Of a DNA stretch of 34,963 bases, positions 2,633 through 34,718 are shown piece after piece. The DNA is from Octopus bimaculoides. Its lineage: Eukaryota. Below the pieces are notes generated by a model that saw only the letters and a program-made list of their open reading frames with translations, made no database searches and was not told the DNA's origin. A program made the translations under genes and the position numbers. The stretch spans positions 38,929,778 to 38,964,740 of the forward strand of contig NC_068987.1 in assembly GCF_001194135.2 (NCBI RefSeq). Direction: 5' to 3'. The first letter of the stretch is position 1. Every line of letters starts with the position of its first letter.

Positions 2633-2654
2633 TCTCTCTCTCTCNNNNNNNNNN

Positions 2655-3158: not shown

Positions 3159-3789
3159 NNNNNNNNNNNNNNNNNNNNNNNNNNNNNNNNNNNNNNNNNN
3201 NNNNNNNNNNNNNNNNNNNNNNNNNNNNNNNNNNNNNNNNNNNNNNNNNNNNNNNNNNNNNNNNNNNNNNNNNNNNNNNNNNNNNNNNNNNNNNNNNNNN
3301 NNNNNNNNNNNNNNNNNNNNNNNNNNNNNNNNNNNNNNNNNNNNNNNNNNNNNNNNNNNNNNNNNNNNNNNNNNNATATGTATACACGTATGTATATAGT
3401 TCACGTATGTGTATATATAATACTAGCTACATTTTATCATATATATATATATATATATATATTTATATGTATATATACTGATATGTGCATTATATATACT
3501 AGCAGAAAGACTACCCTCCGGGCGGTTTTCTCTTTTTTAAACAAACATCACGTTAGTCCAACGACAGAAGGGGAAGCAGTTTGTCAAGTTTTATCTTCCC
3601 CTGAAAGCAACATACAAATTTTAATTTAGCAATCTTTCAGTAAGCTTTGCAGTATGTGTGAGAGAGAGAGGAGGAGAGAACATTGCAAACAATGAATGAA
3701 ATAAACATGAAATCAAAAAATCATATAAATAAAAGGGCATTACTACATGTATGTTATTTATACTACTGTATGTTATTTAAACGTAAATA

Positions 3790-6702: not shown

Positions 6703-7607
6703 TATACTTTCTCTTTTACTCTTTTNNNNNNNNNNNNNNNNNNNNNNNNNNNNNNNNNNNNNNNNNNNNNNNNNNNNNNNNNNNNNNNNNNNNNNNNNNN
6801 NNNNNNNNNNNNNNNNNNNNNNNNNNNNNNNNNNNNNNNNNNNNNNNNNNNNNNNNNNNNNNNNNNNNNNNNNNNNNNNNNNNNNNNNNNNNNNNNNNNN
6901 NNNNNNNNNNNNNNNNNNNNNNNNNNNNNNNNNNNNNNNNNNNNNNNNNNNNNNNNNNNNNNNNNNNNNNNNNNNNNNNNNNNNNNNNNNNNNNNNNNNN
7001 NNNNNNNNNNNNNNNNNNNNNNNNNNNNNNNNNNNNNNNNNNNNNNNNNNNNNNNNNNNNNNNNNNNNNNNNNNNNNNNNNNNNNNNNNNNNNNNNNNNN
7101 NNNNNNNNNNNNNNNNNNNNNNNNNNNNNNNNNNNNNNNNNNNNNNNNNNNNNNNNNNNNNNNNNNNNNNNNNNNNNNNNNNNNNNNNNNNNNNNNNNNN
7201 NNNNNNNNNNNNNNNNNNNNNNNNNNNNNNNNNNNNNNNNNNNNNNNNNNNNNNNNNNNNNNNNNNNNNNNNNNNNNNNNNNNNNNNNNNNNNNNNNNNN
7301 NNNNNNNNNNNNNNNNNNNNNNNNNNNNNNNNNNNNNNNNNNNNNNNNNNNNNNNNNNNNNNNNNNNNNNNNNNNNNNNNNNNNNNNNNNNNNNNNNNNN
7401 NNNNNNNNNNNNNNNNNNNNNNNNNNNNNNNNNNNNNNNNNNNNNNNNNNNNNNNNNNNNNNNNNNNNNNNNNNNNNNNNNNNNNNNNNNNNNNNNNNNN
7501 NNNNNNNNNNNNNNNNNNNNNNNNNNNNNNNNNNNNNNNNNNNNNNNNNNNNNNNNNNNNNNNNNNNNNNNNNNNNNNNNNNNNNNNNNNCATATATATA
7601 TTGATAG

Positions 7608-7988
7608 TAATGGTAAGAAGTTTGCTTTTGTTCTGAGTTCAGTCCCATTGCGGACACCTTGGATAAGTGTCTTCTACTATAGCCTCGGGTTGACCAAAGC
7701 CCTGTGAGTGGATTTGGCGAACGGAAAGTGAAAGAAGCCTCTCTGTGTGTGTGTGCGCGCGCGCGTGTGTGTGTGTGTGTGTGTGTTTGTTCCCTACCAC
7801 TGCTTGACAACTGGGTTGGTTTGTTCACGTCCCCGTAACCTAGCGGTTCAGCAAAAAACACAGCGATAGAATAGGTACCTGGCTTTAATAAATAGTAAGT
7901 ACTCGGGTCGATTGGTTCGATTAAAATTCCTCAAAGCAATGCTCTAGCATGACTGCAGGATAATGACTGAAACAAGTAAAAGATAAGA
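7608..7988 (+). mobile_element. tRNA-head SINE, family A
   Basis: GAGTTCAGTCCC B-box-like motif, internal (GT)n, homology to 1817-2212 and 7998-8370, ends ...ATGACTGAAACAAGTAAAAGATAAGA. Confidence 0.9.
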
Positions 7989-7997
7989 CATTTATTG

Positions 7998-8368
7998 TAG
8001 CTGCGTGGTGAGAAGTTTGTTTCCCAGTCACATGGTTTCAAGTTCAGTGCCACTGCGTAGTACCTTGGGCAAGCGCCTATTATAGCCCTAGGCTGACCAA
8101 AGCCTTGTGAGTGGATGTGGTAGGCAGAAAGAGAAGCCGTCATACATGTATGTGTTTGTGGTGGGGGCACTTTGTGTTTAGGCCCCACCATCGCTTCACA
8201 ACCGGTGTTAGTTTGTTTAACTCTCTGTAACAAGCGGTTCAGCAAAAAAAAAACAATAGAATAATTATCAGGCTTTAAAAAAAATAAGTAGTGGGATTTA
8301 TTTGTTTCACTAAAACCTTTCAAGGTGGTGGCCCAGTATGGCCACAGTTAATAACTAAAACAAGTAAA

Positions 8369-8370
<2 letters not shown>
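7998..8370 (+). mobile_element. tRNA-head SINE, family A (second, directly adjacent copy)
   Basis: Starts TAGCTGCGTGGTGAGAAG (A-box-like), has AAGTTCAGTGCC, same body and ...AAAACAAGTAAAA end, followed by (TG)n. Confidence 0.9.
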
Positions 8371-8416
<46 letters not shown>

Positions 8417-8634
8417 NNNNNNNNNNNNNNNNNNNNNNNNNNNNNNNNNNNNNNNNNNNNNNNNNNNNNNNNNNNNNNNNNNNNNNNNNNNNNNNNNNNN
8501 NNNNNNNNNNNNNNNNNNNNNNNNNNNNNNNNNNNNNNNNNNNNNNNNNNNNNNNNNNNNNNNNNNNNNNNNNNNNNNNNNNNNNNNNNNNNNNNNNNNN
8601 NNNNNNNNNNNNNNNNNNNNNNNNNNNNNNNNNN

Positions 8635-11820: not shown

Positions 11821-12387
11821 CAAATACATACATACATATGTGCGCACCACGAAACTGTCTTGACTTTAAATAAAAGGACTTTGTCATTTTGTTAGAGACC
11901 GGCTTGACTTCTGGAAAGAAATAGCATATATACGAACATGCATAGATACATACATGCACATACTCTAACACATCTAAAAACAAACTCAGCAACCAAAATT
12001 CCACCAATCCCCGTATTTGCTATAATTCCAACAAAAAGCTCCCTTGACTCCGACTGTTTTGAATAATGGTATAGTCCATCAGCGTAGGGTAATCAGTAAA
12101 AGCAACTCTAAAGCCTATGCGGAAATGACCTCAAGTAAGATGCCTTTACGTGCATTCCTTTACGAAAACAAACCTCTTTAACATCATACATTCAGTCATT
12201 AAGGGAACATTCGGTACTATTTAGGACAAAAGCAAAAGAATTGAAGAAACCCAGCTATCTTTGTACCATGTAGAACGTTCATACATTTTTGCTAAAATAC
12301 TGTTACCGTTCAGATTATATTTTTAAAAATGTTGCACAAACTTCTTTCAGATGGCGAATGGGAAGAGTTATAATAATAATAATATAT

Positions 12388-12742
12388 GGAGGCGCAATGG
12401 CCCAGTGGTTAGGACAGCGGACTCGAAGTCACAGGATGGCGGTTTCGATTCCCAGACCGGGCGTTGTGAGTGTTTATTGAGCTAAAGCTCCACGAGGCTC
12501 CAGTGGGGGGAGGCGAACCCTGCTGTACTCTTTCTCTCACTCCTTCTTCCTGTTTCTGTCGCACCTGTACTTCAAAGGGCCAGCCTTGTCACACTATGTG
12601 TCACGCTGAATCTCCCCGGAGAACTACGTTAAAGGTACACGTGTCTGTGGAGTGCTCAGCCATTTGCACATTAATTTCACGAGCAGGCTGCTCCGTTAAT
12701 TGAATCAACTGGAACTGTCGTCGTCGTAACCGACGGAGTGCC
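12388..12742 (+). mobile_element. tRNA-head SINE, family B
   Basis: A-box TGGCCCAGTGG, B-box GGTTTCGATTCCC; colinear with and highly similar to 27955-28336; ends GACGGAGTGCC. Confidence 0.93.
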
Positions 12743-13699
12743 GTAGTATATATAAATGTATATATAGTTTTATGTTCGTAATATCTCTTCATAGATGGTA
12801 TCACTTTTCCACTGTACCCCTTTCAACCGCTAGACAACCTTCTCTTACTACATCCATATCACTAAATAATAGCATTCTGAAATATTTCTTATCGAAAAAG
12901 CTCTACTAGCACGCACACATACACCCACAATCTTGTTCTCTCGACGCCTCTCTCTCTCTCTCTCTCTACATTAATATAGAAGGGAATAAGTAAAGAAAAC
13001 AAAAAGTAGGTCCCACGTCACAACATTCCAGATAATGAGACTGTCGACAAAATTTTAACCATATGCACAAATGCAAGCACTCAGTCATTGTCGTCCATAA
13101 TTTTTTTGTTATTTTCAATTAATGTCGAAGTTGTCAACTTGAACTCGGCACATTATATTCAAGTGGTCTCGAATCATGTTGGTGAGTGGACAAGAAAAAC
13201 TACGTGTCGTTTATTATAGTTACCCTAGTTATGTGGAAATTGTTTAAAAAATACAAACTGGAAACAACGTAACTAATTGTTTCTTCGACTNNNNNNNNNN
13301 NNNNNNNNNNNNNNNNNNNNNNNNNNNNNNNNNNNNNNNNNNNNNNNNNNNNNNNNNNNNNNNNNNNNNNNNNNNNNNNNNNNNNNNNNNNNNNNNNNNN
13401 NNNNNNNNNNNNNNNNNNNNNNNNNNNNNNNNNNNNNNNNNNNNNNNNNNNNNNNNNNNNNNNNNNNNNNNNNNNNNNNNNNNNNNNNNNNNNNNNNNNN
13501 NNNNNNNNNNNNNNNNNNNNNNNNNNNNNNNNNNNNNNNNNNNNNNNNNNNNNNNNNNNNNNNNNNNNNNNNNNNNNNNNNNNNNNNNNNNNNNNNNNNN
13601 NNNNNNNNNNNNNNNNNNNNNNNNNNNNNNNNNNNNNNNNNNNNNNNNNNNNNNNNNNNNNNNNNNNNNNNNNNNNNNNNNNNNNNNNNNNNNNNNNNN

Positions 13700-14200: not shown

Positions 14201-14373
14201 ATCATGAACCAACTGTTATTTTCTCAGATGCAGTACGGAATTTGGTCAGTGATCAGATCGCGGTCTCAAAGTGACGAAAATATTTCGGCAAATTAAATTT
14301 AAATGTTGAAGTGAATTTAACAGTTTTTGTGTGTTTTTAAATGGCTTATAAACACCTTCCACGCTGCAATTAT

Positions 14374-14406
<33 letters not shown>

Positions 14407-14546
14407 NNNNNNNNNNNNNNNNNNNNNNNNNNNNNNNNNNNNNNNNNNNNNNNNNNNNNNNNNNNNNNNNNNNNNNNNNNNNNNNNNNNNNNNNNNNNNN
14501 NNNNNNNNNNNNNNNNNNNNNNNNNNNNNNNNNNNNNNNNNNNNNN

Positions 14547-14600
<54 letters not shown>

Positions 14601-14601
<1 letters not shown>

Positions 14602-14955
14602 GAAGTGATATATCTCGACTTTGGAAAGGCCTTCGATAAAATCGATCATGGAAAAAGTCGATAACAAACTGCGTGATAGTCGGAAAATTGGGAGAATGGC
14701 TGCACGACTTTCTGAAGGACAGAAGTCAGGTGGTAGTAACCAATGGGGCCACCTCCAATGACACGCAAATAGTGAGCGGTGTTCCGCAAGGCACAGTTTT
14801 AGAAACACTACTGTTTATAATGGCCCACTCAGCTATGCCCTCAGCCACACAGACAGCCACGATCACAAGTTATGCAGATGGTACAAAGTCTCACAGGTGA
14901 TACAGAACCTTGAAGACATTATGCACCTGCAATGTGAGTTGCATGGAATATACGA
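14601..14955 (+). mobile_element. CR1/L2-group LINE reverse transcriptase fragment
   Basis: EVIYLDFGKAFDKIDHG, then frameshifted GKLGEWLHDFLKDRSQVVVTNG...SGVPQGTVL..LLF...ITSYADGTK (RT motifs LDFxKAFD, GVPQG, degenerate YADD). Confidence 0.92.
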
Positions 14956-16110: not shown

Positions 16111-16281
16111 NNNNNNNNNNNNNNNNNNNNNNNNNNNNNNNNNNNNNNNNNNNNNNNNNNNNGGTTCATTTTTAGTATTCTCGTTTGTGAGAGCAATCGA
16201 GTTTATTAAAAAACATCTCCGGTTAATCATTGAGAGGATGTTGGTGTTACCTTGGTCGAAGTTTGTGCTCTCTGAGTGCTC

Positions 16282-16320
16282 TTATTATTATTATTATTAT
16301 TATTAATATTATTATTATCA

Positions 16321-16382
<62 letters not shown>

Positions 16383-16383
16383 G
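16282..16383. repeat. (TAT)n trinucleotide microsatellite
   Basis: Direct reading; source of the poly-L and poly-N ORFs. Confidence 0.97.
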
Positions 16384-16384
16384 A

Positions 16385-16930
16385 CTGAGAGAGCAGTGCA
16401 TGTCATCAAAATGACACTGGGGTACAAATATATGAAGCTAAATATACCCATCATGACTACCAGTCTGATAAAGATACACCAGGCACATGCATCACAACCA
16501 AATGTGCGTGACATGGTGATCTCATATCAAAATAGACCTCGCACATGGGGCCCAGCTAGAAATTTCTTCAGCTCGAATAGCTCATCCTGCTCAAAAGGTC
16601 CCTGAATGAGGTTTGTTTAAGGATGATGAATGAAACACCCATGTGTCCATAGGTGCATCATTCAAACCCCAAAGAATTCCTCTCAGCACATGACTATGAT
16701 GTTTCCCACTACTCCTGCTCGTGATCAGAGATGCACATATCGTCATCCACTAAGGGGCATGTTCAACTGGTTATGGTCAAGCAGCTGACAAGCAAATCTG
16801 TGATATTGAGCAGAATATTTGCTGTAGCCCATCTTTTATACCAAGACAAAACAATGTACATGGTAACACTTCCAATCAGTTAAGATCAGAAGCCATAAGA
16901 GCCAGTGCCTGGTACAGCATCAGGGCATTT
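16385..16930. mobile_element. Unclassified interspersed repeat (probably two pieces)
   Basis: Looks like a repeat I associate with octopus genomes and ends in GGCATTT x3. No second copy in this window, so this rests on recognition only. Confidence 0.35.
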
Positions 16931-16954
16931 ATGGCATTTGGGCATTTATTATTA

Positions 16955-16980: not shown

Positions 16981-17039
16981 AAACATAAAAAATGTAAGCA
17001 TCTGTAAACAGTGTACTGGTTCCATGAGAAATGTTTGTA

Positions 17040-17175
17040 TATTTACGTTCTGAGTTCAAATCCTGCCGAGATCGACTTTGCCTTTCGTCTATTAGGGGTC
17101 GATAAATTAAGTATCAATTGTGTACTGAGGTCGATCTAATCAACTGCCCCTCCCCACAAAAAATTCAGGCCTAGA
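17040..17175 (+). mobile_element. tRNA-head SINE, family C (5'-truncated)
   Basis: B-box GAGTTCAAATCC followed by GTCGACTTTGCCTTTC-like and GGGGTCGATAAATTAAGTA blocks; homologous to 10632-10705. Confidence 0.85.
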
Positions 17176-18173
17176 AAAGTATATTGTGACAGTTACAGAA
17201 TATAGAAAGTAATGTAACACCAATAACTGTATAATCCAACCAAAATATCTGTTACACAAACGAAAATGGAATTACTATTCAACCTTATAATACATCGTAC
17301 ATATTTAAAGAACCTTAATGTACAAATTGAAATGCAAAAGATCGAAATAATAAATGGATTTATGAATGAAAGTTTGGTAATTGCGTTTATTTCCACTCCA
17401 CGACACTTATAATTGCAAACATGTCTCTTTCACTCTCTCTTTCTCTCTCACTTTTTCTCTTACGTCCTCTCTGAAATATTTAAAAACACAAAACGAATGC
17501 TGTTACCACTCACTGTCTCTTTCACTNNNNNNNNNNNNNNNNNNNNNNNNNNNNNNNNNNNNNNNNNNNNNNNNNNNNNNNNNNNNNNNNNNNNNNNNNN
17601 NNNNNNNNNNNNNNNNNNNNNNNNNNNNNNNNNNNNNNNNNNNNNNNNNNNNNNNNNNNNNNNNNNNNNNNNNNNNNNNNNNNNNNNNNNNNNNNNNNNN
17701 NNNNNNNNNNNNNNNNNNNNNNNNNNNNNNNNNNNNNNNNNNNNNNNNNNNNNNNNNNNNNNNNNNNNNNNNNNNNNNNNNNNNNNNNNNNNNNNNNNNN
17801 NNNNNNNNNNNNNNNNNNNNNNNNNNNNNNNNNNNNNNNNNNNNNNNNNNNNNNNNNNNNNNNNNNNNNNNNNNNNNNNNNNNNNNNNNNNNNNNNNNNN
17901 NNNNNNNNNNNNNNNNNNNNNNNNNNNNNNNNNNNNNNNNNNNNNNNNNNNNNNNNNNNNNNNNNNNNNNNNNNNNNNNNNNNNNNNNNNNNNNNNNNNN
18001 NNNNNNNNNNNNNNNNNNNNNNNNNNNNNNNNNNNNNNNNNNNNNNNNNNNNNNNNNNNNNNNNNNNNNNNNNNNNNNNNNNNNNNNNNNNNNNNNNNNN
18101 NNNNNNNNNNNNNNNNNNNNNNNNNNNNNNNNNNNNNNNNNNNNNNNNNNNNNNNNNNNNNNNNNNNNNNNNN

Positions 18174-19749: not shown

Positions 19750-20576
19750 ATGAATAATTAAAGAGACGCGAAAAAACTGAGAAGGCAGCATATAGAAAAC
19801 GCAGACAGTAAACAACGGAAAACGAAAAACGGAAAACAAAAAAGAGAAACTAAAATGTCAAAAATGAAAAATAAAAGCTAAAAGAGCTATCCTCCTTGGA
19901 CCTTAAAGGATAAGGCTGAAAAGATATCAAGTCAGTCAGGAATAGGCTGAATTTTTCGATTATTAAAAATATATTTAAATATATGCATGCAACCACTGAA
20001 AATTTCTGTCCTGGAGTCCAATAGAGAGTTAGGGATCTTAGATCTGAACAAGATCTGCTCTCTTCTAGCTAAACGAAGTCTACATCTATTCGATCCATTC
20101 ACATAAGGTTTTTCAATTACTTCCATTTAATCACATGCGGGGTTTCGTTATCTTTCAAAGTCCATACATAGCTAACTAACTTAGTAGCTTTACTTTTGTC
20201 CCTATGTCGGAAGAAGGCTATGTGATTGGCATAGCGATTTTTAAATTCACCTTCCCATAATCCAATATAGGTCTTCTTATCAGTTGAATTATTATTTAGG
20301 ATTGCAGTAACTTCTGCCTCATATATAATAGATTTAGTCGTACATCGTTGGTCAAGTGGACAGGATCCTGGGTCGCAACAGTTGCAACTAGATTCAGGTT
20401 CTTGGTATTGACCCCGTGTAATGGTACTCTTCATATTGGGGCAGCAGCTATATGATAATTTCACAGAAGGACTATTAAATATTTTCCAGTATCTGTGAGT
20501 GGCTGGAAAGTGTTTGTCTTGCAGTGACAGTAATCTTTTACCAATGTTAGTTTTTATATTAAGGGAAAAGGGAAGG
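19750..20576 (-). mobile_element. Penelope-like element, inverted arm with GIY-YIG endonuclease and 3' UTR
   Basis: CNCCDPGSCPLDQRCTTKSIIYEAEV...TYIGLWEGEFKNRYANHIAFFRHRDKSKATKLVSYVWTLKD...IKWK, then KPYVNGSNRCRL. This is the typical PLE CNC-CPL plus GIY-YIG C-terminus. Confidence 0.95.
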
Positions 20577-21780
20577 GCGACGTCTGTGATCTTGTGGATT
20601 TATTTATATTACATACATTGAGATATAGATACCCGGCTCATGACATTGGTTTATACCGTGACGGTGGTTTGGGTATTTCCCATAGGTGTTATGGTCACCC
20701 CCTTGATAGATTTAGGAAACAACTAATTTCTAGCTTTAATCAATTATGACTTAAAATTACAGCAGCTACTAATCTCTATATAGTTGATTATGTGGATGTT
20801 TTCCTAGATTTAAACTCTTCCTCGTATAAACCTTTCCATAAGCCTAGTGAGAAACTCGCATGTATACATAAACAGTCTTGTCAACCTCCTGTAGTATTTA
20901 AAAACCTGATAGCTAATATTAGTAACAGTGTCAAACCTCTCTACTTCCAAAGAAATTTTCGAGAAAGCTGCCTCCCTTATAACAAGGCCCTAGCCAATAG
21001 TGGCTTCAAGGATAATATATAATCCCTCTAATAATAACCAAAATATTAATAATAGATCTAGTAGCATCAAAGGTAAAGTAGTATTAATCAGGATAATAAG
21101 AAACCTAAAAATAGGCAAAGGAAAATTATTTGGTTCGCCCTCCCTTTTCCCTTAAAATAAAAACTAGCATTGGTAAAAGATTCCTGTCACTCCAAGACAA
21201 ACAATTTCCTACCACTCACAGATACAGAAAAATGTTTAATAGGCCTTCTGTGAAATTATCATATAGCTGAAGAATATCATTACACGTGGTCAATACCAAA
21301 AACCTGAATCCAGTTACAACTGTCGTGACCCAAGATGCCAATCACATAGCCTTCTTCCGACACAGAGACAAAAGTAAAGTTACTAAGTTGACCAGCTATG
21401 TATGGACTTTGAAAGATAACGAAACATTGCATGTGATTAAACGGAATAAATGTAGACTTATTAAACAAAATAAATGTAGATCCTGTTCAGATCTAAGATC
21501 CCTAACTCTCTATAGAACTCCAGGTCAGAAATTTTCAGTGATTGCATGTATATGTATAAATATATTTTGAAGAACTGAAAAATTCCGCCTATTCCTGACT
21601 AACTTGTTATCTTTCCAGCCTTATTATCTAAGGTCTAAGGAGGATTATTTTACCTTTTACCTTTTACTTTTTATTTTTGACATTTTAGTTTCTGTTTTTC
21701 GTTTTCCGTTGTTTACTGTCTGCGTTTTCTATATGCTGCCTTCTTAGTTTTTTTGCGTTTCTTCTATTATTCAATTTCTT
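20575..21780 (+). mobile_element. Penelope-like element, forward arm (RT C-terminal half, partly deleted GIY-YIG, 3' UTR)
   Basis: VCDLVDLFIL...IGLYRDGGLG (degenerate LYRDDGL), VDYVDVFLDLNSSSYKPFHKP...IHKQSCQPP, RKIIWF..PFS. About 21140-21780 is the reverse complement of 19750-20576 apart from an internal deletion. Confidence 0.95.
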
Positions 21781-22035: not shown

Positions 22036-22809
22036 GAAATTAATTAGAATTACGTCGAATTTTCAATTACGGGATGGGCGTTGCCATGAGAATGGTTGTT
22101 TGTTTAATAACGTCATATAGTAAAACAAAACCACTAGATTACTTCGTCAGACATGTTTGAAGAATCAAAACACAATTCGATTCAGTCTACGAGAAATTTG
22201 TCACAACATTCCAAGAAAATTTTTAGAATGCGTTTACAACAAATAACATGAGGGCATAGGATAAATTCAATNNNNNNNNNNNNNNNNNNNNNNNNNNNNN
22301 NNNNNNNNNNNNNNNNNNNNNNNNNNNNNNNNNNNNNNNNNNNNNNNNNNNNNNNNNNNNNNNNNNNNNNNNNNNNNNNNNNNNNNNNNNNNNNNNNNNN
22401 NNNNNNNNNNNNNNNNNNNNNNNNNNNNNNNNNNNNNNNNNNNNNNNNNNNNNNNNNNNNNNNNNNNNNNNNNNNNNNNNNNNNNNNNNNNNNNNNNNNN
22501 NNNNNNNNNNNNNNNNNNNNNNNNNNNNNNNNNNNNNNNNNNNNNNNNNNNNNNNNNNNNNNNNNNNNNNNNNNNNNNNNNNNNNNNNNNNNNNNNNNNN
22601 NNNNNNNNNNNNNNNNNNNNNNNNNNNNNNNNNNNNNNNNNNNNNNNNNNNNNNNNNNNNNNNNNNNNNNNNNNNNNNNNNNNNNNNNNNNNNNNNNNNN
22701 NNNNNNNNNNNNNNNNNNNNNNNNNNNNNNNNNNNNNNNNNNNNNNNNNNNNNNNNNNNNNNNNNNNNNATATATATATACACGCACACATAATGACAGA
22801 CAGGCAGGC

Positions 22810-27918: not shown

Positions 27919-27949
<31 letters not shown>

Positions 27950-27954
27950 TGTGT

Positions 27955-28336
27955 GGAGGCAATGGCCCAGTGGTTAGGGCAGCGGACTCGCAGTTATAGG
28001 ATCGCGGTTTCGATTCCCATACTGTGCGTTGTGAGTGTTTATTGCGCGAAAACACCTAAAGCACCACAAAGCTCCGGCAGGGGATGGTGGCGAACCCTGC
28101 TGTACTCTTCCACCACAACTTTCTCTCACTCTTACTTCCTCTTTCTGTTGTGCCTGTAATTCAAAGGGTCAGCCTTGTCACACTATGTCACGCTGAATAT
28201 CCCCGAGAACTACGTTAAGGGTACACGTGTCTGTGGAGTGCTCAGCCACTTGCACGTTAATTTCACGAGCAGGCTGTTCCGTTGATCGGATCAACTGGAA
28301 CCCTCGACGTCGCAAGCGACGGAGTGCCAACAACAA
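27955..28336 (+). mobile_element. tRNA-head SINE, family B, inserted in a (TGTA)n tract
   Basis: A-box TGGCCCAGTGG, B-box GGTTTCGATTCCC, colinear with 12388-12742, (AAC)n tail, (TGTA)n on both sides. Confidence 0.93.
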
Positions 28337-30680: not shown

Positions 30681-31176
30681 GAACACTGAAATCTCAGATA
30701 GAGTGAATGATTAATTATCTATTCAAAGTACAGTTAACAAAGAATGGTCATGCCTTTTCCCTAGCGAAAACTTGAAAAAGTTTTTCGTTGAGTAATAGTG
30801 ACATTGTTTCAAAGTAAGCATGGACACTTATAGAAATACATTAATGCCTGCGTAGGAAGAAAGAGAAGAGAACTAGAGAAAAAGCTGGGTGATGCTTGAC
30901 AACAAACTTCAATTGAAAGAAACTTCAATATTCTTTTATTTAAAAGAAAACAGAAAAATAAACAATAATAAATCTTTGTGCGAGGTATAAACAGTAGCTG
31001 CACGACATCGTGAAGTATATTTGCCACCTAAGTGTGGCTAATCCTTAAGGGTTGATGCTACTGTAGCTTGTAGCCTCAGGAAGACATCTCCTCCAGCTGG
31101 CTATTGACACACTACCTGTGCCCTATCAGTATTTGCAAAAGGAAGTCATCGTTCCCATCTCCAGCCTGACGTGTTA

Positions 31177-31221
31177 CACACGGACCCGAGTTTCTGGTTA
31201 TTGATCCGTCATCAGCGTGTG
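31177..31221 (-). ncRNA. Minimal type I hammerhead ribozyme motif
   Basis: Minus strand reads CACACG-CTGATGA-CGGATCAATAACCA-GAAAC-TCGG-GTC-CGTGTG: perfect 6-bp stem I, intact core, short stem II, self-complementary ACTCGGGT stem III, GUC triplet. Confidence 0.9.
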
Positions 31222-31568
31222 ACAACCACCGGTTGGCGATGGGAAATGATTCTCAATGCAAATATATAAATACCTTTTCCAGTGACGAAAAGCCACTGAT
31301 CTCGAAAAAGTGGAAAAAAGCAATAAAAAATCTCTGAGCGATGTATAAACAGTAGGGTTGACGCTACAGTAGCATCAACCCTTAAGGGTTAACCACATTT
31401 AGGTGGCAAATATACTTCACGATGTCGTGCAGCTACTGTTTATACATCGGTCAGAGATTTATTATTGCTTGTTTCCACTTTTTCGAGATCAGTGGCTTTT
31501 CGTCACTGGAAAAGTTATATATATATATTTGCATTGAGAATCATTTCCCATCGCCAACCGGTGGTTGT

Positions 31569-31613
31569 CACACGCTGATGAGGGGTCAATATCCAGAAAC
31601 TCGGGTCCATGTG
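31569..31613 (+). ncRNA. Minimal type I hammerhead ribozyme motif (second copy)
   Basis: CACACG-CTGATGA-GGGGTCAATATCCA-GAAAC-TCGG-GTC-CATGTG; one mismatch in stem I; predicted cleavage after 31607. Confidence 0.88.
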
Positions 31614-31944
31614 TATAACGTCAGTCTGGAGATGGGAACAATGACTTCCCTTTGCAAATATTGATAGGGCACAGTTAGTGTGTCAATAGCCAGCTGGAGG
31701 AGATGTCTTCCTGGGGCTACAAGCTACAGTAGCATCAACCCTTAACGGTTAGCCACATTTAGGTGGCAAATATACTTCAAGAAAAATAGACGTTTTCTTT
31801 TTGATATCATTTTTTTCGATAAATTCACAAGTCTAGGATTGACAGCTATGGTTATAAGAAATTTCTCTGAAATAAAAAGCAAACTATAAAAAGAAACTTG
31901 TAATAGTGATGTGGCGTTATTGCCTGCAGCATCTACTGTTGTCG

Positions 31945-31950
<6 letters not shown>

Positions 31951-31979
<29 letters not shown>
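31951..31979. repeat. (CTA)n microsatellite
   Basis: Direct reading. Confidence 0.95.
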
Positions 31980-32092
31980 GAATCCCGAGAGAATTATGGA
32001 ATGGGAGATTGATATCTTGGGACAACTATCTCCAATGTTATTTATGCACTGCTTGATGACGATTCACACAGACACTCCTGCAGTGGACGTGA

Positions 32093-32131
<39 letters not shown>

Positions 32132-32331
32132 TTTGTACGTGCGTGAGAAAGGAAATACCACAATCACTAGTCATGGCTGTGTTCTAATTTAGCGAATAAA
32201 AGTCTGAAATACAAGTAAAACAAGTACCGAATTCGACAACGCTTTTATTGACATTTCCTATTTTAGAACGTCTTTAAATAGTAGAATGGCACTGAGACAC
32301 CTGTTTAACTTTCTTAACAGTCGGCGATTGT

Positions 32332-32381
<50 letters not shown>

Positions 32382-32714
32382 TACTGTTTTGAAACTTTTT
32401 TTTTTTTAATATAAATGATTAGGTTTTGTTCTGTTTGGTATTTGCAGCCGTCATACCATGTATGTGAAATACTCTTTTCAGTTTGTATTTAAAACAAGAC
32501 CTAAAGCAATTGTTATAGCTTATAGGACTCTGTGTTTATTTCTCGGGTATCGATTGATACATGCCTACGACAGGAAACTAGAGTTCTGATATTTTCAGTT
32601 GGTTACAAATTACTCCCAGATTGAGTCGAACAAGCTTAATATATGAAAGATACATTTCCTGGATGAGCCGGGATTATCAGATGTTTCGGATCTTTCCACA
32701 TCGGACACACTTAC

Positions 32715-33143: not shown

Positions 33144-33199
33144 NNNNNNNNNNNNNNNNNNNGTGTGCGCGCGTGAAGCTATTTTATGCGTGTATGTGT

Positions 33200-34657: not shown

Positions 34658-34718
34658 CATACATACATACATACATACATNNNNNNNNNNNNNNNNNNNN
34701 NNNNNNNNNNNNNNNNNN

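What the first reader, a model, noticed from the sequence alone, without database searches (positions are those of the whole stretch)
30945..31779. Retrozyme-like ~360-bp hammerhead unit, tandemly repeated and folded back on itself
Seen in the sequence: a non-coding ~360-bp unit occurs as two arms of about 1.15 units each. Each arm overlaps its own start, as head-to-tail repeats or a copied circular template would. The arms are inverted relative to each other, and each carries a minimal type I HHR with intact CTGATGA/GAAAC core, GUC triplet and self-complementary stem III (31177-31221 minus; 31569-31613 plus). Established knowledge: animal non-LTR retrozymes are tandem repeats of a few hundred bp with minimal type I HHRs, are processed to monomeric circular RNAs, and are thought to use PLE enzymes; PLE pseudo-LTRs carry similar HHRs. 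Inference: this is a cephalopod retrozyme family or a non-autonomous PLE derivative. This locus would place an HHR on either strand and give a ~400-bp hairpin if read through. Both copies have a mismatched stem II closing pair (C.A and G.A), so these particular copies may be impaired.
Basis: partly seen in the sequence, partly recalled or inferred. Interest (0 to 1): 0.85.

Follow-up and report, generated by a model that had tools for sequence, protein, structure and literature searches.

The report
Decayed hammerhead retrozyme insertion, octopus genome
This is most likely an old, inactive copy of a small non-coding mobile element that carries a self-cutting RNA motif (hammerhead ribozyme), pasted into an octopus genome as two mirror-image pieces in the way Penelope-like retrotransposons insert; the kind is known from mussels, corals and amphibians, so it is a new example, not a new kind.

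Summary
A non-coding 360-bp unit (31363-31722) occurs as a plus arm of 1.17 units (31363-31782) and a minus arm of 1.11 units (31355-30956). The arms lie head-to-head and are 93% identical. Each arm has one head-to-tail junction and one hammerhead-like motif, at exactly the stated coordinates.

- The motif has the canonical metazoan type I geometry, as in mussel and coral retrozymes, not the "minimal" Penelope-like element (PLE) form. Rfam Hammerhead_1 aligns full length, but at only 16.0 and 11.3 bits against a gathering score of 34.
- The stem II closing pair is mismatched in both copies.
- Neither arm holds two ribozymes, so this locus cannot release a monomer or a circle by itself.
- The fold-back has a precedent. 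Partial tandem plus an adjacent inverted copy is the published signature of PLE integration.
- A 9-bp direct repeat (AGAAAAATA) flanks the whole composite. The two ends are asymmetric by about 50 nt.
- A Hydra-clade PLE remnant 10 kb away has the same head-to-head layout.
- Repeats in the window match Octopus vulgaris DNA.

No other copy of the unit could be retrieved. Copy number, core conservation and RNA circles therefore remain untested.

Verdict: a decayed non-LTR-retrozyme-type element, a new member of a known kind, of moderate to low interest.

The parts
30952..30960 (.). Left copy of the 9-bp direct repeat AGAAAAATA. It is a candidate target-site duplication and overlaps the A-rich last bases of the left-arm homology.
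   Evidence: The same 9-mer lies at 31780-31788. In this window, equally spaced 26-bp zones share a 9-mer at 0.66% of positions.
30956..31355 (-). Left arm: 1.11 units in minus orientation (unit 71-360, then 1-112). The head-to-tail junction is at 31068/31067. The 3' end of the arm faces outward, to the left.
   Evidence: blastn. Alignment of 402 columns at 93.3% identity. Direct repeat D4 and inverted repeats I1-I3.
31177..31221 (-). Hammerhead-like motif, minus copy: CACACG CUGAUGA CGGAUCAAUAACCA GAAAC UCGG GUC CGUGUG. Helix I is a perfect 6 bp. Helix II is weak (C.A, G-C, G-C, A.A, U-A). The predicted cut is 3' of C31183.
   Evidence: Rfam RF00163 positions 1-45 of 45, 16.0 bits, E = 0.12 on a 76-nt slice; gathering score 34. 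The dimer cofold gives a double hammerhead with an 8-bp helix III, -24.3 kcal/mol.
31356..31380 (.). Inversion centre: the local palindrome GGTTGAC-GCTAC-A-GTAGC-ATCAACC, centred on 31368. The left arm resumes at unit 71 after a CAGTAG microhomology, so unit 19-70 is missing from that arm.
   Evidence: Sequence. blastn hit of unit 1-20 to 31373..31354. Alignment.
31363..31782 (+). Right arm: 1.17 units in plus orientation (unit 1-360 = 31363-31722, then 1-60). The head-to-tail junction is at 31722/31723. The 3' end of the arm faces outward, to the right.
   Evidence: Direct repeat D1 with spacing 360, 95%. blastn. Alignment.
31516..31528 (.). (TA)n microsatellite inside the unit, at unit 154-166. 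It has decayed in the left arm, around 31262-31272.
   Evidence: Sequence. Low-complexity blast hits. The significance is unknown; Hydra-clade PLEs target (TA)n (PMC8557442).
31569..31613 (+). Hammerhead-like motif, plus copy: CACACG CUGAUGA GGGGUCAAUAUCCA GAAAC UCGG GUC CAUGUG. Helix I has one C.A mismatch. Helix II is G.A, G-C, G-C, G.U, U-A. The predicted cut is between 31607 and 31608.
   Evidence: Rfam RF00163 positions 1-45 of 45, 11.3 bits, E = 4 on a 76-nt slice. It is the only hit of my descriptor in the window. The chance rate is about 0.002 per window.
31614..31666 (+). Segment 3' of the cleavage site that pairs with 31520-31568. This extends helix I into a long imperfect helix that closes the 360-nt RNA.
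   Evidence: Folding of the monomer permuted at the cleavage site: -109.5 kcal/mol against -92.3 +/- 4.6 for shuffles, z = -3.8 linear and -3.1 circular. Inverted repeat I13.
31780..31788 (.). Right copy of the 9-bp direct repeat AGAAAAATA, the candidate target-site duplication.
   Evidence: sequence.

Best explanation
The locus (about 30956/30961 to 31779/31782) is one old, now decaying insertion of a roughly 360-nt non-coding retroelement of the animal non-LTR retrozyme type, that is, a non-autonomous dependant of Penelope-like elements (PLEs).

Inferred life cycle, taken from the literature on relatives:
- Master copies are tandem arrays.
- Their transcripts are cut by a type I hammerhead that works as a dimer through its palindromic helix III.
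- The 360-nt monomers are ligated into highly self-paired circles.
- A PLE reverse transcriptase / GIY-YIG endonuclease copies the circular or multimeric RNA into a nicked target.

What happened here, inferred from the anatomy: both target strands primed cDNA synthesis. Each cDNA ran for more than one unit length (1.1-1.2 units). The two products met head-to-head at a short palindrome with microhomology. This gave two inverted arms with 3' ends outward, an extension of about 50 nt at one end, and a 9-bp target-site duplication.

What is shown directly: the repeat anatomy, the motif and its geometry, the flank repeat, the long hairpin, and the octopod origin.

Current state: each arm carries one ribozyme and the arms have diverged by about 7%, so the locus is a dead-end copy. 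It cannot release a monomer in cis, and its two ribozymes are probably impaired.
For: - Anatomy. A more-than-unit copy in each arm, a head-to-head arrangement and 93% arm identity.
- Simultaneous origin. The stretch present in three copies (unit 1-60) shows a star-like difference pattern, as expected if all copies arose together.
- Single integration. A 9-bp direct repeat flanks the whole composite, p about 0.007 within this window.
- Asymmetric ends. One arm ends at unit ~107-112 and the other at unit ~57-60. This matches the one-sided 'tail' described for PLE insertions and argues against terminal-inverted-repeat transposition.
- Published PLE signature. Partial tandem plus an adjacent inverted 5'-truncated copy (PMC8557442). 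Paired hammerheads on opposite strands 100-700 bp apart were seen in Schistosoma (PMC4209133).
- Motif geometry. It is identical to Rfam type I, and Hammerhead_1 is the top-scoring family for both copies. The 8-nt palindromic helix III segment is the same length as in the cloned mussel retrozyme. The dimer folds as a double hammerhead.
- Chance rate of the motif: about 0.002 per 32 kb.
- Unit properties. 360 bp, 43% GC, non-coding, and an RNA more stable than shuffles (z -3 to -3.8) with helix I extended into a long closing helix. These match the retrozyme descriptions in PMC7229834.
- PLEs in the host. A Hydra-clade PLE remnant with the same head-to-head layout lies at 19751-21773. Penelope elements are abundant in coleoid genomes.
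- A 2026 preprint derives retrozymes from PLE pseudo-LTRs.
Against: - Rfam scores (16.0 and 11.3 bits) are far below the gathering score of 34. The stem II part of the model was skipped in both alignments.
- No hammerhead hit appeared when the whole window was searched, or the 1.1-kb region.
- The 10.1-11.1 pair, highly conserved as G-C in natural hammerheads, is mismatched in both copies. A at 11.1 is shared, so the template probably had it already.
- Only two related copies exist for comparison, so there is no covariation evidence.
- Seven of the 25 arm differences cluster in and just 3' of the motif, so there is no sign of constraint.
- Across a genome of a few gigabases, on the order of a hundred chance matches to my loose descriptor would be expected. 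This is an extrapolation.
- No second copy of the unit is in the window. None was found in 23 kb of other octopus DNA, or in the metagenome, viral or protein collections.
- The target-site duplication is A-rich, and its left copy overlaps the end of the homology.
- There is no RNA evidence.
Confidence: 0.6

Rival explanations
1. It is a foldback-type or long-terminal-inverted-repeat DNA transposon (MITE-like). The two arms are its inverted terminal repeats, built of sub-repeats. It was inserted by a transposase that makes 9-bp target duplications. The hammerhead-like motif is incidental.
For: Two long abutting inverted arms and a 9-bp flanking direct repeat. No coding capacity. From my own knowledge, Drosophila Foldback elements have repeat-built arms and 9-bp duplications.
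Against: - The termini are not reverse complements of each other. The left arm runs about 50 nt further (unit ~107-112) than the right (unit ~57-60), and the candidate duplication abuts these unequal ends.
- The arms are circular permutations of one 360-nt unit, not a terminal sequence plus sub-repeats.
- The motif geometry is unlikely by chance.
- A bona fide PLE remnant in the same window has the same topology.
Confidence: 0.08
2. It is a fragment of an ordinary satellite or tandem repeat (period 360) that was folded back by a DNA-level accident, such as replication template switching or hairpin-mediated inverted duplication. The hammerhead-like motif is a chance match, or a long-dead relic without a present role.
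For: The inversion centre sits on a short palindrome in the unit, with CAGTAG microhomology and a 52-nt deletion. This is typical of template-switch junctions. The motif is sub-threshold in Rfam and imperfect in stem II. The bare core alone is not above chance.
Against: There is no array: only 1.1-1.2 units per arm and no further copies nearby. A direct repeat flanks the composite, as for an insertion. The full descriptor is rare by chance. Unit size, GC content, self-pairing and helix III palindrome match retrozymes.
Confidence: 0.15
3. The 360-bp period is not a stand-alone element. It is the terminal (pseudo-LTR) region of a coding PLE whose pseudo-LTR happens to be internally repeated. The locus is then a heavily 5'-truncated autonomous PLE insertion.
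For: PLE insertions are usually strongly 5'-truncated, with tandem or inverted pseudo-LTRs that carry hammerheads. Hydra-clade PLEs carry canonical hammerheads and occur in molluscs. A Hydra-clade remnant is in the window.
Against: Both arms cross a head-to-tail junction with the same 360-nt period. This requires a template that repeats every 360 nt. No similarity exists between the unit and the PLE remnant or its flanks in this window. No hammerhead-like motif was found in that remnant.
Confidence: 0.12
4. It is an assembly artefact: a palindromic mis-join in a gap-rich short-read scaffold.
For: The window has 11 runs of N next to microsatellites. Craig et al. note that PLE tandem/inverted structures trouble short-read assemblies.
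Against: There is no N within 30900-31850. The arms differ at 25 positions plus indels and a 52-nt deletion, so they are not the same reads used twice.
Confidence: 0.03

Closest known systems
Metazoan non-LTR retrozymes, especially the Mytilus galloprovincialis family (Cervera & de la Pena 2020, PMC7229834)
   Same: - Non-coding unit of a few hundred bp: mussel 350-390 bp, here 360 bp.
- GC below 50%.
- Type I hammerhead with a 6-bp helix I, a short helix II and an 8-nt palindromic helix III segment (mussel ACGCGCGU, here ACUCGGGU).
- The unit RNA is predicted to be highly self-paired.
- Mollusc host that also carries PLEs.
- Target duplication longer than 4 bp.
   Different: - Retrozymes are defined by arrays with a ribozyme in every repeat. 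Here there are only 1.1-1.2 units and one ribozyme per arm.
- The two arms are inverted.
- Stem II has a mismatched 10.1-11.1 pair.
- No circular RNA, copy number or cleavage data.
- No sequence similarity beyond the motif was looked for or seen.
Penelope-like element insertions: pseudo-LTR partial tandem plus adjacent inverted 5'-truncated copy and a one-sided 30-40-bp tail (Craig et al. 2021, PMC8557442), with hammerheads in the pseudo-LTRs (Cervera & de la Pena 2014, PMC4209133)
   Same: - Head-to-head inverted copies with 3' ends outward.
- More-than-unit (partial tandem) copies.
- An extension at one end only.
- Variable-length target duplication.
- Hammerhead on each strand a few hundred bp apart.
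- The same topology in a Hydra-clade PLE remnant 10 kb away in this window.
   Different: - No RT or GIY-YIG reading frame. The whole period is 360 nt.
- The ribozyme lacks the 'min-HHR' marks: a long helix II, no helix III, and G10.1-C11.1 with an extra base after A9.
- The one-sided extension is about 50 nt, not 30-40 nt.
Double-hammerhead satellites (newt satellite 2, Schistosoma Sm-alpha; Forster et al. 1988 as cited in PMC4209133)
   Same: Helix III is too short to be stable in a monomer. Its palindromic sequence gives an 8-bp intermolecular helix in a dimer. This is predicted here for the minus copy.
   Different: Those ribozymes sit in long arrays that supply the second ribozyme in cis. 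This locus has none in cis.
L1 'twin priming' 5' inversions (Ostertag & Kazazian 2001; from my own knowledge)
   Same: There is an inverted 5' segment and a direct 3' segment. The 5' ends meet in the middle at a microhomology, with a small deletion or duplication. One target-site duplication flanks the whole.
   Different: In L1 the two segments are different parts of a linear mRNA. Here both are permuted copies of the same 360-nt unit, which implies a circular or multimeric template. A different enzyme family would be involved.
Foldback / long-inverted-repeat DNA transposons
   Same: Abutting long inverted arms, a 9-bp flanking repeat and no coding capacity.
   Different: The ends are unequal by about 50 nt. 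The arms are permutations of one unit, not true terminal repeats.

Membership tests
Hammerhead ribozyme, type I (Rfam RF00163) | Conserved core: C3-U-G-A-N-G-A9, G12-A-A14, A15.1-U16.1, and a non-G nucleotide (H17) at the cleavage site | tested here: met
   Both copies read CUGAUGA ... GAAA ... GUC with no core change.
Hammerhead ribozyme, type I (Rfam RF00163) | Three helices in type I topology, with G10.1-C11.1 closing helix II | tested here: inconclusive
   Helix I is 6 bp, perfect in the minus copy and with one C.A in the plus copy. Helix III is 2 bp plus the loop UCGG. In helix II the 10.1-11.1 pair is G.A or C.A, followed by 4 pairs (plus copy) or by 2 pairs, an A.A mismatch and 1 pair (minus copy). 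The covariance model skipped stem II in both alignments.
Hammerhead ribozyme, type I (Rfam RF00163) | Score at or above the curated gathering score (34 bits) | tested here: not met
   16.0 and 11.3 bits. There was no hit on the full window or on 1.1 kb. Caveat: a well-formed motif in metagenome locus L002 also scored only 18.5 bits.
Hammerhead ribozyme, type I (Rfam RF00163) | Helices supported by covariation across family members | not testable with these tools
   Only two related copies are available, and no cephalopod genome collection is at hand.
Hammerhead ribozyme, type I (Rfam RF00163) | Site-specific self-cleavage | not testable with these tools
   This needs in vitro transcription of monomer and dimer constructs.
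Metazoan non-LTR retrozyme | Tandem array of 150-450-bp repeats with a type I hammerhead in every repeat | tested here: not met
   The unit length of 360 bp is in range. However, each arm holds only 1.11-1.17 units and one ribozyme, and the window has no other copy. The locus would count as a 'monomer derivative' in the sense of the 2026 preprint.
Metazoan non-LTR retrozyme | Non-coding; no LTR, primer-binding site or polypurine tract; GC below 50% | tested here: met
   The longest open frame is 92 codons. There are no homologues for any frame. There is no tRNA-like part. GC is 43%.
Metazoan non-LTR retrozyme | Target-site duplication longer than 4 bp, when present | tested here: inconclusive
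   The 9-bp repeat AGAAAAATA is at both ends, p about 0.007 in this window. It is A-rich, and its left copy overlaps the end of the homology.
Metazoan non-LTR retrozyme | Unit RNA highly self-paired and stable | tested here: met
   z = -3.8 (linear) and -3.1 (circular), with 64% of bases paired.
Metazoan non-LTR retrozyme | Expressed as unit-length linear and circular RNA; multi-copy family in the genome | not testable with these tools
   No cephalopod genome or transcriptome DNA search is available. Indirect protein-based look-ups were negative.
Penelope-like element (autonomous) | Single reading frame encoding RT plus a GIY-YIG endonuclease | tested here: not met
   There is no such frame in or next to the unit. 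At most it is a non-autonomous dependant.
Penelope-like element (insertion signature) | Partial tandem (pseudo-LTR) plus adjacent inverted 5'-truncated copy, with a one-sided tail | tested here: met
   compared with the description in PMC8557442. The one-sided extension is about 50 nt, against the described 30-40 nt.

The most novel reading that the evidence does not exclude
The locus is a direct structural footprint showing that a circular or multimeric retrozyme RNA was integrated by PLE-type, doubly primed reverse transcription. The marks are a head-to-head composite, more-than-unit arms, a one-sided tail and a single target duplication. It would be the first such evidence, and it would reveal an undescribed cephalopod retrozyme family that may still be expressed as circular RNA. 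In addition, if transcribed, inverted copies like this one would give double-stranded RNA of about 360 bp. Such RNA could feed small-RNA silencing of the family or serve as an ADAR substrate in these editing-rich animals.
Probability: 0.25. Interest if true: 0.55.

Novelty: new member of a known kind. Interest (0 to 1): 0.35.

Why it matters
Hammerhead-bearing retrozymes are known from cnidarians, mussels, insects, fishes and amphibians. Their link to Penelope-like elements rests so far on co-occurrence and on sequence relatedness to pseudo-LTRs.

If a genome-wide survey confirms a family behind this copy, three things would follow:
- Cephalopods would be added to the host range. I found no paper reporting hammerheads or retrozymes in cephalopods.
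- Insertion-site anatomy (head-to-head composites with target duplications) would become an independent line of evidence that PLE enzymes move these RNAs.
- There would be a defined unit to look for among octopus circular RNAs.

As a single decayed locus it has little functional weight.

Tried and rejected
Searches for more copies of the unit, all without result:
1. Protein route. The unit's 80-aa ORF, and a 908-aa concatenate of all open six-frame segments of both arms, had no homologue among 5.8 billion proteins.
2. Strict hammerhead-plus-stem pattern. It had no match in the metagenome or viral contigs.
3. Looser pattern. It gave 21 metagenome matches, and none is homologous to the unit. One of them, L002, is a well-formed hammerhead-like motif with the same helix III but is not in a tandem repeat.
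4. Other octopus DNA. 23 kb was fetched through the PLE protein hits and holds no copy.

Other checks:
5. Rfam at gathering score on the window and at E<=10 on 1.1 kb gave no hammerhead. The only hits were spurious long-hairpin 'miRNA' matches such as MIR821 at 112 bits.
6. Pfam on ten window ORFs gave nothing.
7. A relaxed hammerhead scan of the whole window, including the PLE remnant, gave no further candidates.
8. A tRNA/SINE origin is rejected: no tRNA-like gene.
9. 'Minimal PLE-type hammerhead' is rejected on geometry.
10. CpG decay is rejected as the cause of A at 11.1, because C-to-A is a transversion.
11. The equal lengths of the 52-nt inner deletion and the ~52-nt outer extension of the left arm were considered. 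They are judged a coincidence, because the right flank has no similarity to unit 61-112.
Full report
**Observation.**
- Taking 31363-31722 as the unit, blastn against the window finds the unit's first 60 nt again at 31723-31782 (95%).
- Unit 71-360 lies on the minus strand at 31355..31068, and unit 1-112 lies directly after it at 31067..30956.
- Each arm therefore crosses one head-to-tail junction. The right arm is 1.17 units and the left arm is 1.11 units.
- The arms are head-to-head. With the ribozyme strand as sense, their 5' ends meet in the middle and their 3' ends point outward.
- The full left-arm alignment has 402 columns at 93.3% identity: 25 substitutions (12 transitions, 13 transversions) and two small indels.
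- The centre is a local palindrome, GGTTGAC-GCTAC-A-GTAGC-ATCAACC (31356-31380), built on a short palindrome of the unit itself.
- Next to the centre the left arm lacks unit 19-70 and resumes after a CAGTAG microhomology.
- No other copy of the unit is in the 35-kb window.
- A read-through transcript would form a hairpin of about 360 bp (-641.5 kcal/mol, z = -73). This hairpin also explains the spurious Rfam 'MIR821' hit.

**The ribozyme motif.** Both copies sit at the stated coordinates.
- Plus copy, 31569-31613: CACACG CUGAUGA GGGGUCAAUAUCCA GAAAC UCGG GUC CAUGUG.
- Minus copy, 31221-31177: CACACG CUGAUGA CGGAUCAAUAACCA GAAAC UCGG GUC CGUGUG.
- Rfam gave no hammerhead hit at gathering score on the window, nor at E<=10 on 1.1 kb.
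- On 76-nt slices the top-scoring family for both copies is Hammerhead_1 (RF00163). It aligns over model positions 1-45 of 45 without indels. The scores are only 16.0 bits (E = 0.12) and 11.3 bits (E = 4) against a gathering score of 34, and the stem II part of the model was skipped.
- The geometry is a 6-bp helix I, a 14-nt stem-loop II, and a 2-bp helix III with a 4-nt loop. This is the canonical metazoan type I form described by Cervera & de la Pena. It is not their 'min-HHR' of PLE pseudo-LTRs, which has a long helix II, no helix III, an extra base after A9 and a conserved G10.1-C11.1.
- The cloned mussel retrozyme has the same 8-nt palindromic helix III segment: ACGCGCGU, against ACUCGGGU here.
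- As isolated 45-mers the hammerhead fold is not the minimum-energy fold. Two minus-copy motifs, however, cofold into a double hammerhead with an 8-bp helix III, as known for newt and Schistosoma ribozymes.
- Defects: 10.1-11.1 is G.A (plus) or C.A (minus). The plus copy has a C.A in helix I, and the minus copy has an A.A in helix II. The helix I and A.A defects are private to one arm, so the common template lacked them. A at 11.1 is shared, so the template probably had a non-canonical closing pair already. The alternative, that 10.1 was U, would need two hits at one site.

**Chance.**
- The bare core pattern is not above chance: 4 overlapping matches at two related sites against 3.4 expected.
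- A descriptor with helices that accepts the plus copy hit 1 of 600 random 32-kb sequences.
- That is rare for one window. Extrapolated to a genome of a few gigabases, though, it allows on the order of a hundred chance matches. The motif alone is therefore not proof.
- The weight comes from its presence inside a permuted, more-than-unit, non-coding repeat of retrozyme size.

**The unit.**
- It is 360 bp with 43% GC.
- The longest open frame has 92 codons. Neither an 80-aa ORF nor a 908-aa concatenate of all open segments in six frames has a homologue.
- It has no tRNA-like part.
- RNA permuted at the cleavage site is more stable than shuffles: z = -3.8 linear and -3.1 circular. The antisense gives -3.2 and -3.5.
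- In the fold, the 55 nt after the cut pair with the 50 nt before the ribozyme, extending helix I into a long closing helix.
- These properties match the published description of animal non-LTR retrozymes: 150-450-bp repeats, GC below 50%, no LTR/PBS/PPT, highly self-paired RNA, and 350-390 bp in mussel.

**Insertion anatomy.**
- A 9-bp direct repeat, AGAAAAATA, lies at 30952-30960 and 31780-31788 and flanks the whole composite. In this window, equally spaced 26-bp zones share a 9-mer at 0.66% of positions.
- The two outer ends are unequal. The right arm stops at unit ~57-60, and the left arm runs on to unit ~107-112.
- The stretch present in three copies (unit 1-60) shows mostly private differences. 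This star pattern fits a simultaneous origin.
- Craig et al. (PMC8557442) describe PLE insertions as strongly 5'-truncated partial tandems, often with an inverted 5'-truncated copy immediately adjacent and a 30-40-bp tail at one end.
- Cervera & de la Pena saw paired hammerheads on opposite strands 100-700 bp apart in Schistosoma.
- The fold-back is thus the expected product of PLE-type integration.
- Unequal ends abutting the duplication argue against a terminal-inverted-repeat transposon.
- The 360-nt period in both arms requires a circular or multimeric template.
- My mechanistic reading is inference, by analogy with L1 twin priming: both target strands primed cDNA synthesis on such a template, and the products joined head-to-head at a microhomology.

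**Context.**
- The window is a gap-rich eukaryotic scaffold with 11 runs of N.
- At 19751-21773 it holds two inverted partial copies of a retroelement. Its frames show an RT motif (GLYRDGGL), a CNC-CDPGS-C linker and a GIY...YIG core without internal cysteines.
- This fits the CxCX5C linker and the absent CCHH motif that define the Hydra clade of PLEs. That clade occurs in molluscs, carries canonical hammerheads and targets (TA)n.
- Pfam did not recognise the frames, so the assignment rests on motifs.
- The best named homologue is an Octopus vulgaris hypothetical protein at 65% identity.
- Window repeats match an O. vulgaris chromosome at 82-88%, so the host is an octopod.
- Penelope elements are among the abundant coleoid repeat families.
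- The PLE remnant has the same head-to-head topology as the ribozyme locus. It shares no sequence with the unit and has no recognisable hammerhead.

**What could not be done.**
- No collection at hand holds cephalopod genomes or transcriptomes as searchable DNA.
- Pattern scans of metagenome and viral contigs found no relative of the unit.
- 23 kb of octopus DNA fetched through protein hits holds none.
- Family size, arrays, core conservation, covariation, the partner element, circular RNA and cleavage therefore remain untested.
- A well-formed hammerhead-like motif in metagenome locus L002 scored only 18.5 bits. The Rfam threshold is thus a weak guide for such short motifs in either direction.

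**Verdict.** The best-supported reading (about 0.6) is one old composite insertion of a ~360-nt, hammerhead-bearing, non-autonomous PLE-dependent element of the non-LTR retrozyme type, now decaying. It has one ribozyme per arm, so it cannot release monomers or circles in cis. The rivals, with my estimates, are:
- DNA-level fold-back of a satellite fragment with a chance motif (0.15)
- a truncated autonomous PLE with a repeated pseudo-LTR (0.12)
- a foldback-type DNA transposon (0.08)
- mis-assembly (0.03)

The kind is known, so I class this as a new member of a known kind. I found no report of hammerheads or retrozymes in cephalopods, nor of head-to-head retrozyme insertions in the papers read. 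A genome-wide follow-up would therefore have modest value.

Noticed in passing
window 19751-21773 (minus copy 19751-20576, plus copy about 20577-21773; ORF 20120-20599 minus): Two inverted, head-to-head partial copies of a retroelement. Its frames show an RT motif (GLYRDGGL), a CxCX5C linker (CNC-CDPGS-C) and a GIY...YIG core without the CCHH cysteines. These are the marks of the 'Hydra' clade of Penelope-like elements. The best named homologue is an Octopus vulgaris hypothetical protein (65%). Pfam does not recognise the frames, and no hammerhead was found in the element.
   Followed up: partly
window 14341-14897 (+): Fragment of a non-LTR (LINE-type) reverse transcriptase (YLDFGKAFDKIDH ... 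SGVPQGTVLETLLF ... SYADGTK). It is interrupted by a (GT)n tract and an assembly gap. Pfam gave no hit on the 86-aa piece.
   Followed up: partly
window 16297-16932; also 1821-2267, 7630-8369 and 17038-17156: Interspersed repeats that match several places in a 20-kb stretch of Octopus vulgaris chromosome OX597833.1 at about 67-88% identity (82-88% for the 16297-16932 element). This places the window in an octopod genome.
   Followed up: partly
window 12380-12742 and 27947-28328: Two copies of another interspersed repeat, 82% identical and in the same orientation. It was not classified.
   Followed up: no
window 2645-2654, 3159-3375, 6726-7590, 8417-8634, 13291-13699, 14407-14546, 16111-16162, 17527-18173, 22272-22769, 33144-33162, 34681-34718: Eleven runs of N (3,113 bases in all), most next to GT/CA or TA microsatellites. 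The window is a gap-rich scaffold, and the low-GC troughs in the composition profile are these gaps.
   Followed up: yes
window unit positions 220-263 (31582-31625 and 31165-31208): Seven of the 25 substitutions between the two arms cluster in and just 3' of the hammerhead motif, where about 2.7 would be expected. Two of them hit both partners of the 10.4-11.4 pair (G.U against A.A). The cause is unexplained. It could be chance, or heterogeneity in the RNA templates.
   Followed up: partly
L002 6927-6969 (-), metagenome contig Ga0126336_10004877: A well-formed type I hammerhead-like motif (gagcaa CUGAUGA GGUUC-ACUGAA-GAACC GAAAC UCGG GUC uugcuu) with the same helix III as the octopus motif. 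It scores 18.5 bits against Hammerhead_HH9 and is not within a tandem repeat.
   Followed up: partly
window 31950-31980, 32089-32132, 32332-32383: (CTA)n, (GT)n and (TA)n microsatellites lie within 600 bp to the right of the insertion. PLEs are reported to favour microsatellite targets, but the insertion itself sits in an A-rich stretch, not in one of these tracts.
   Followed up: no
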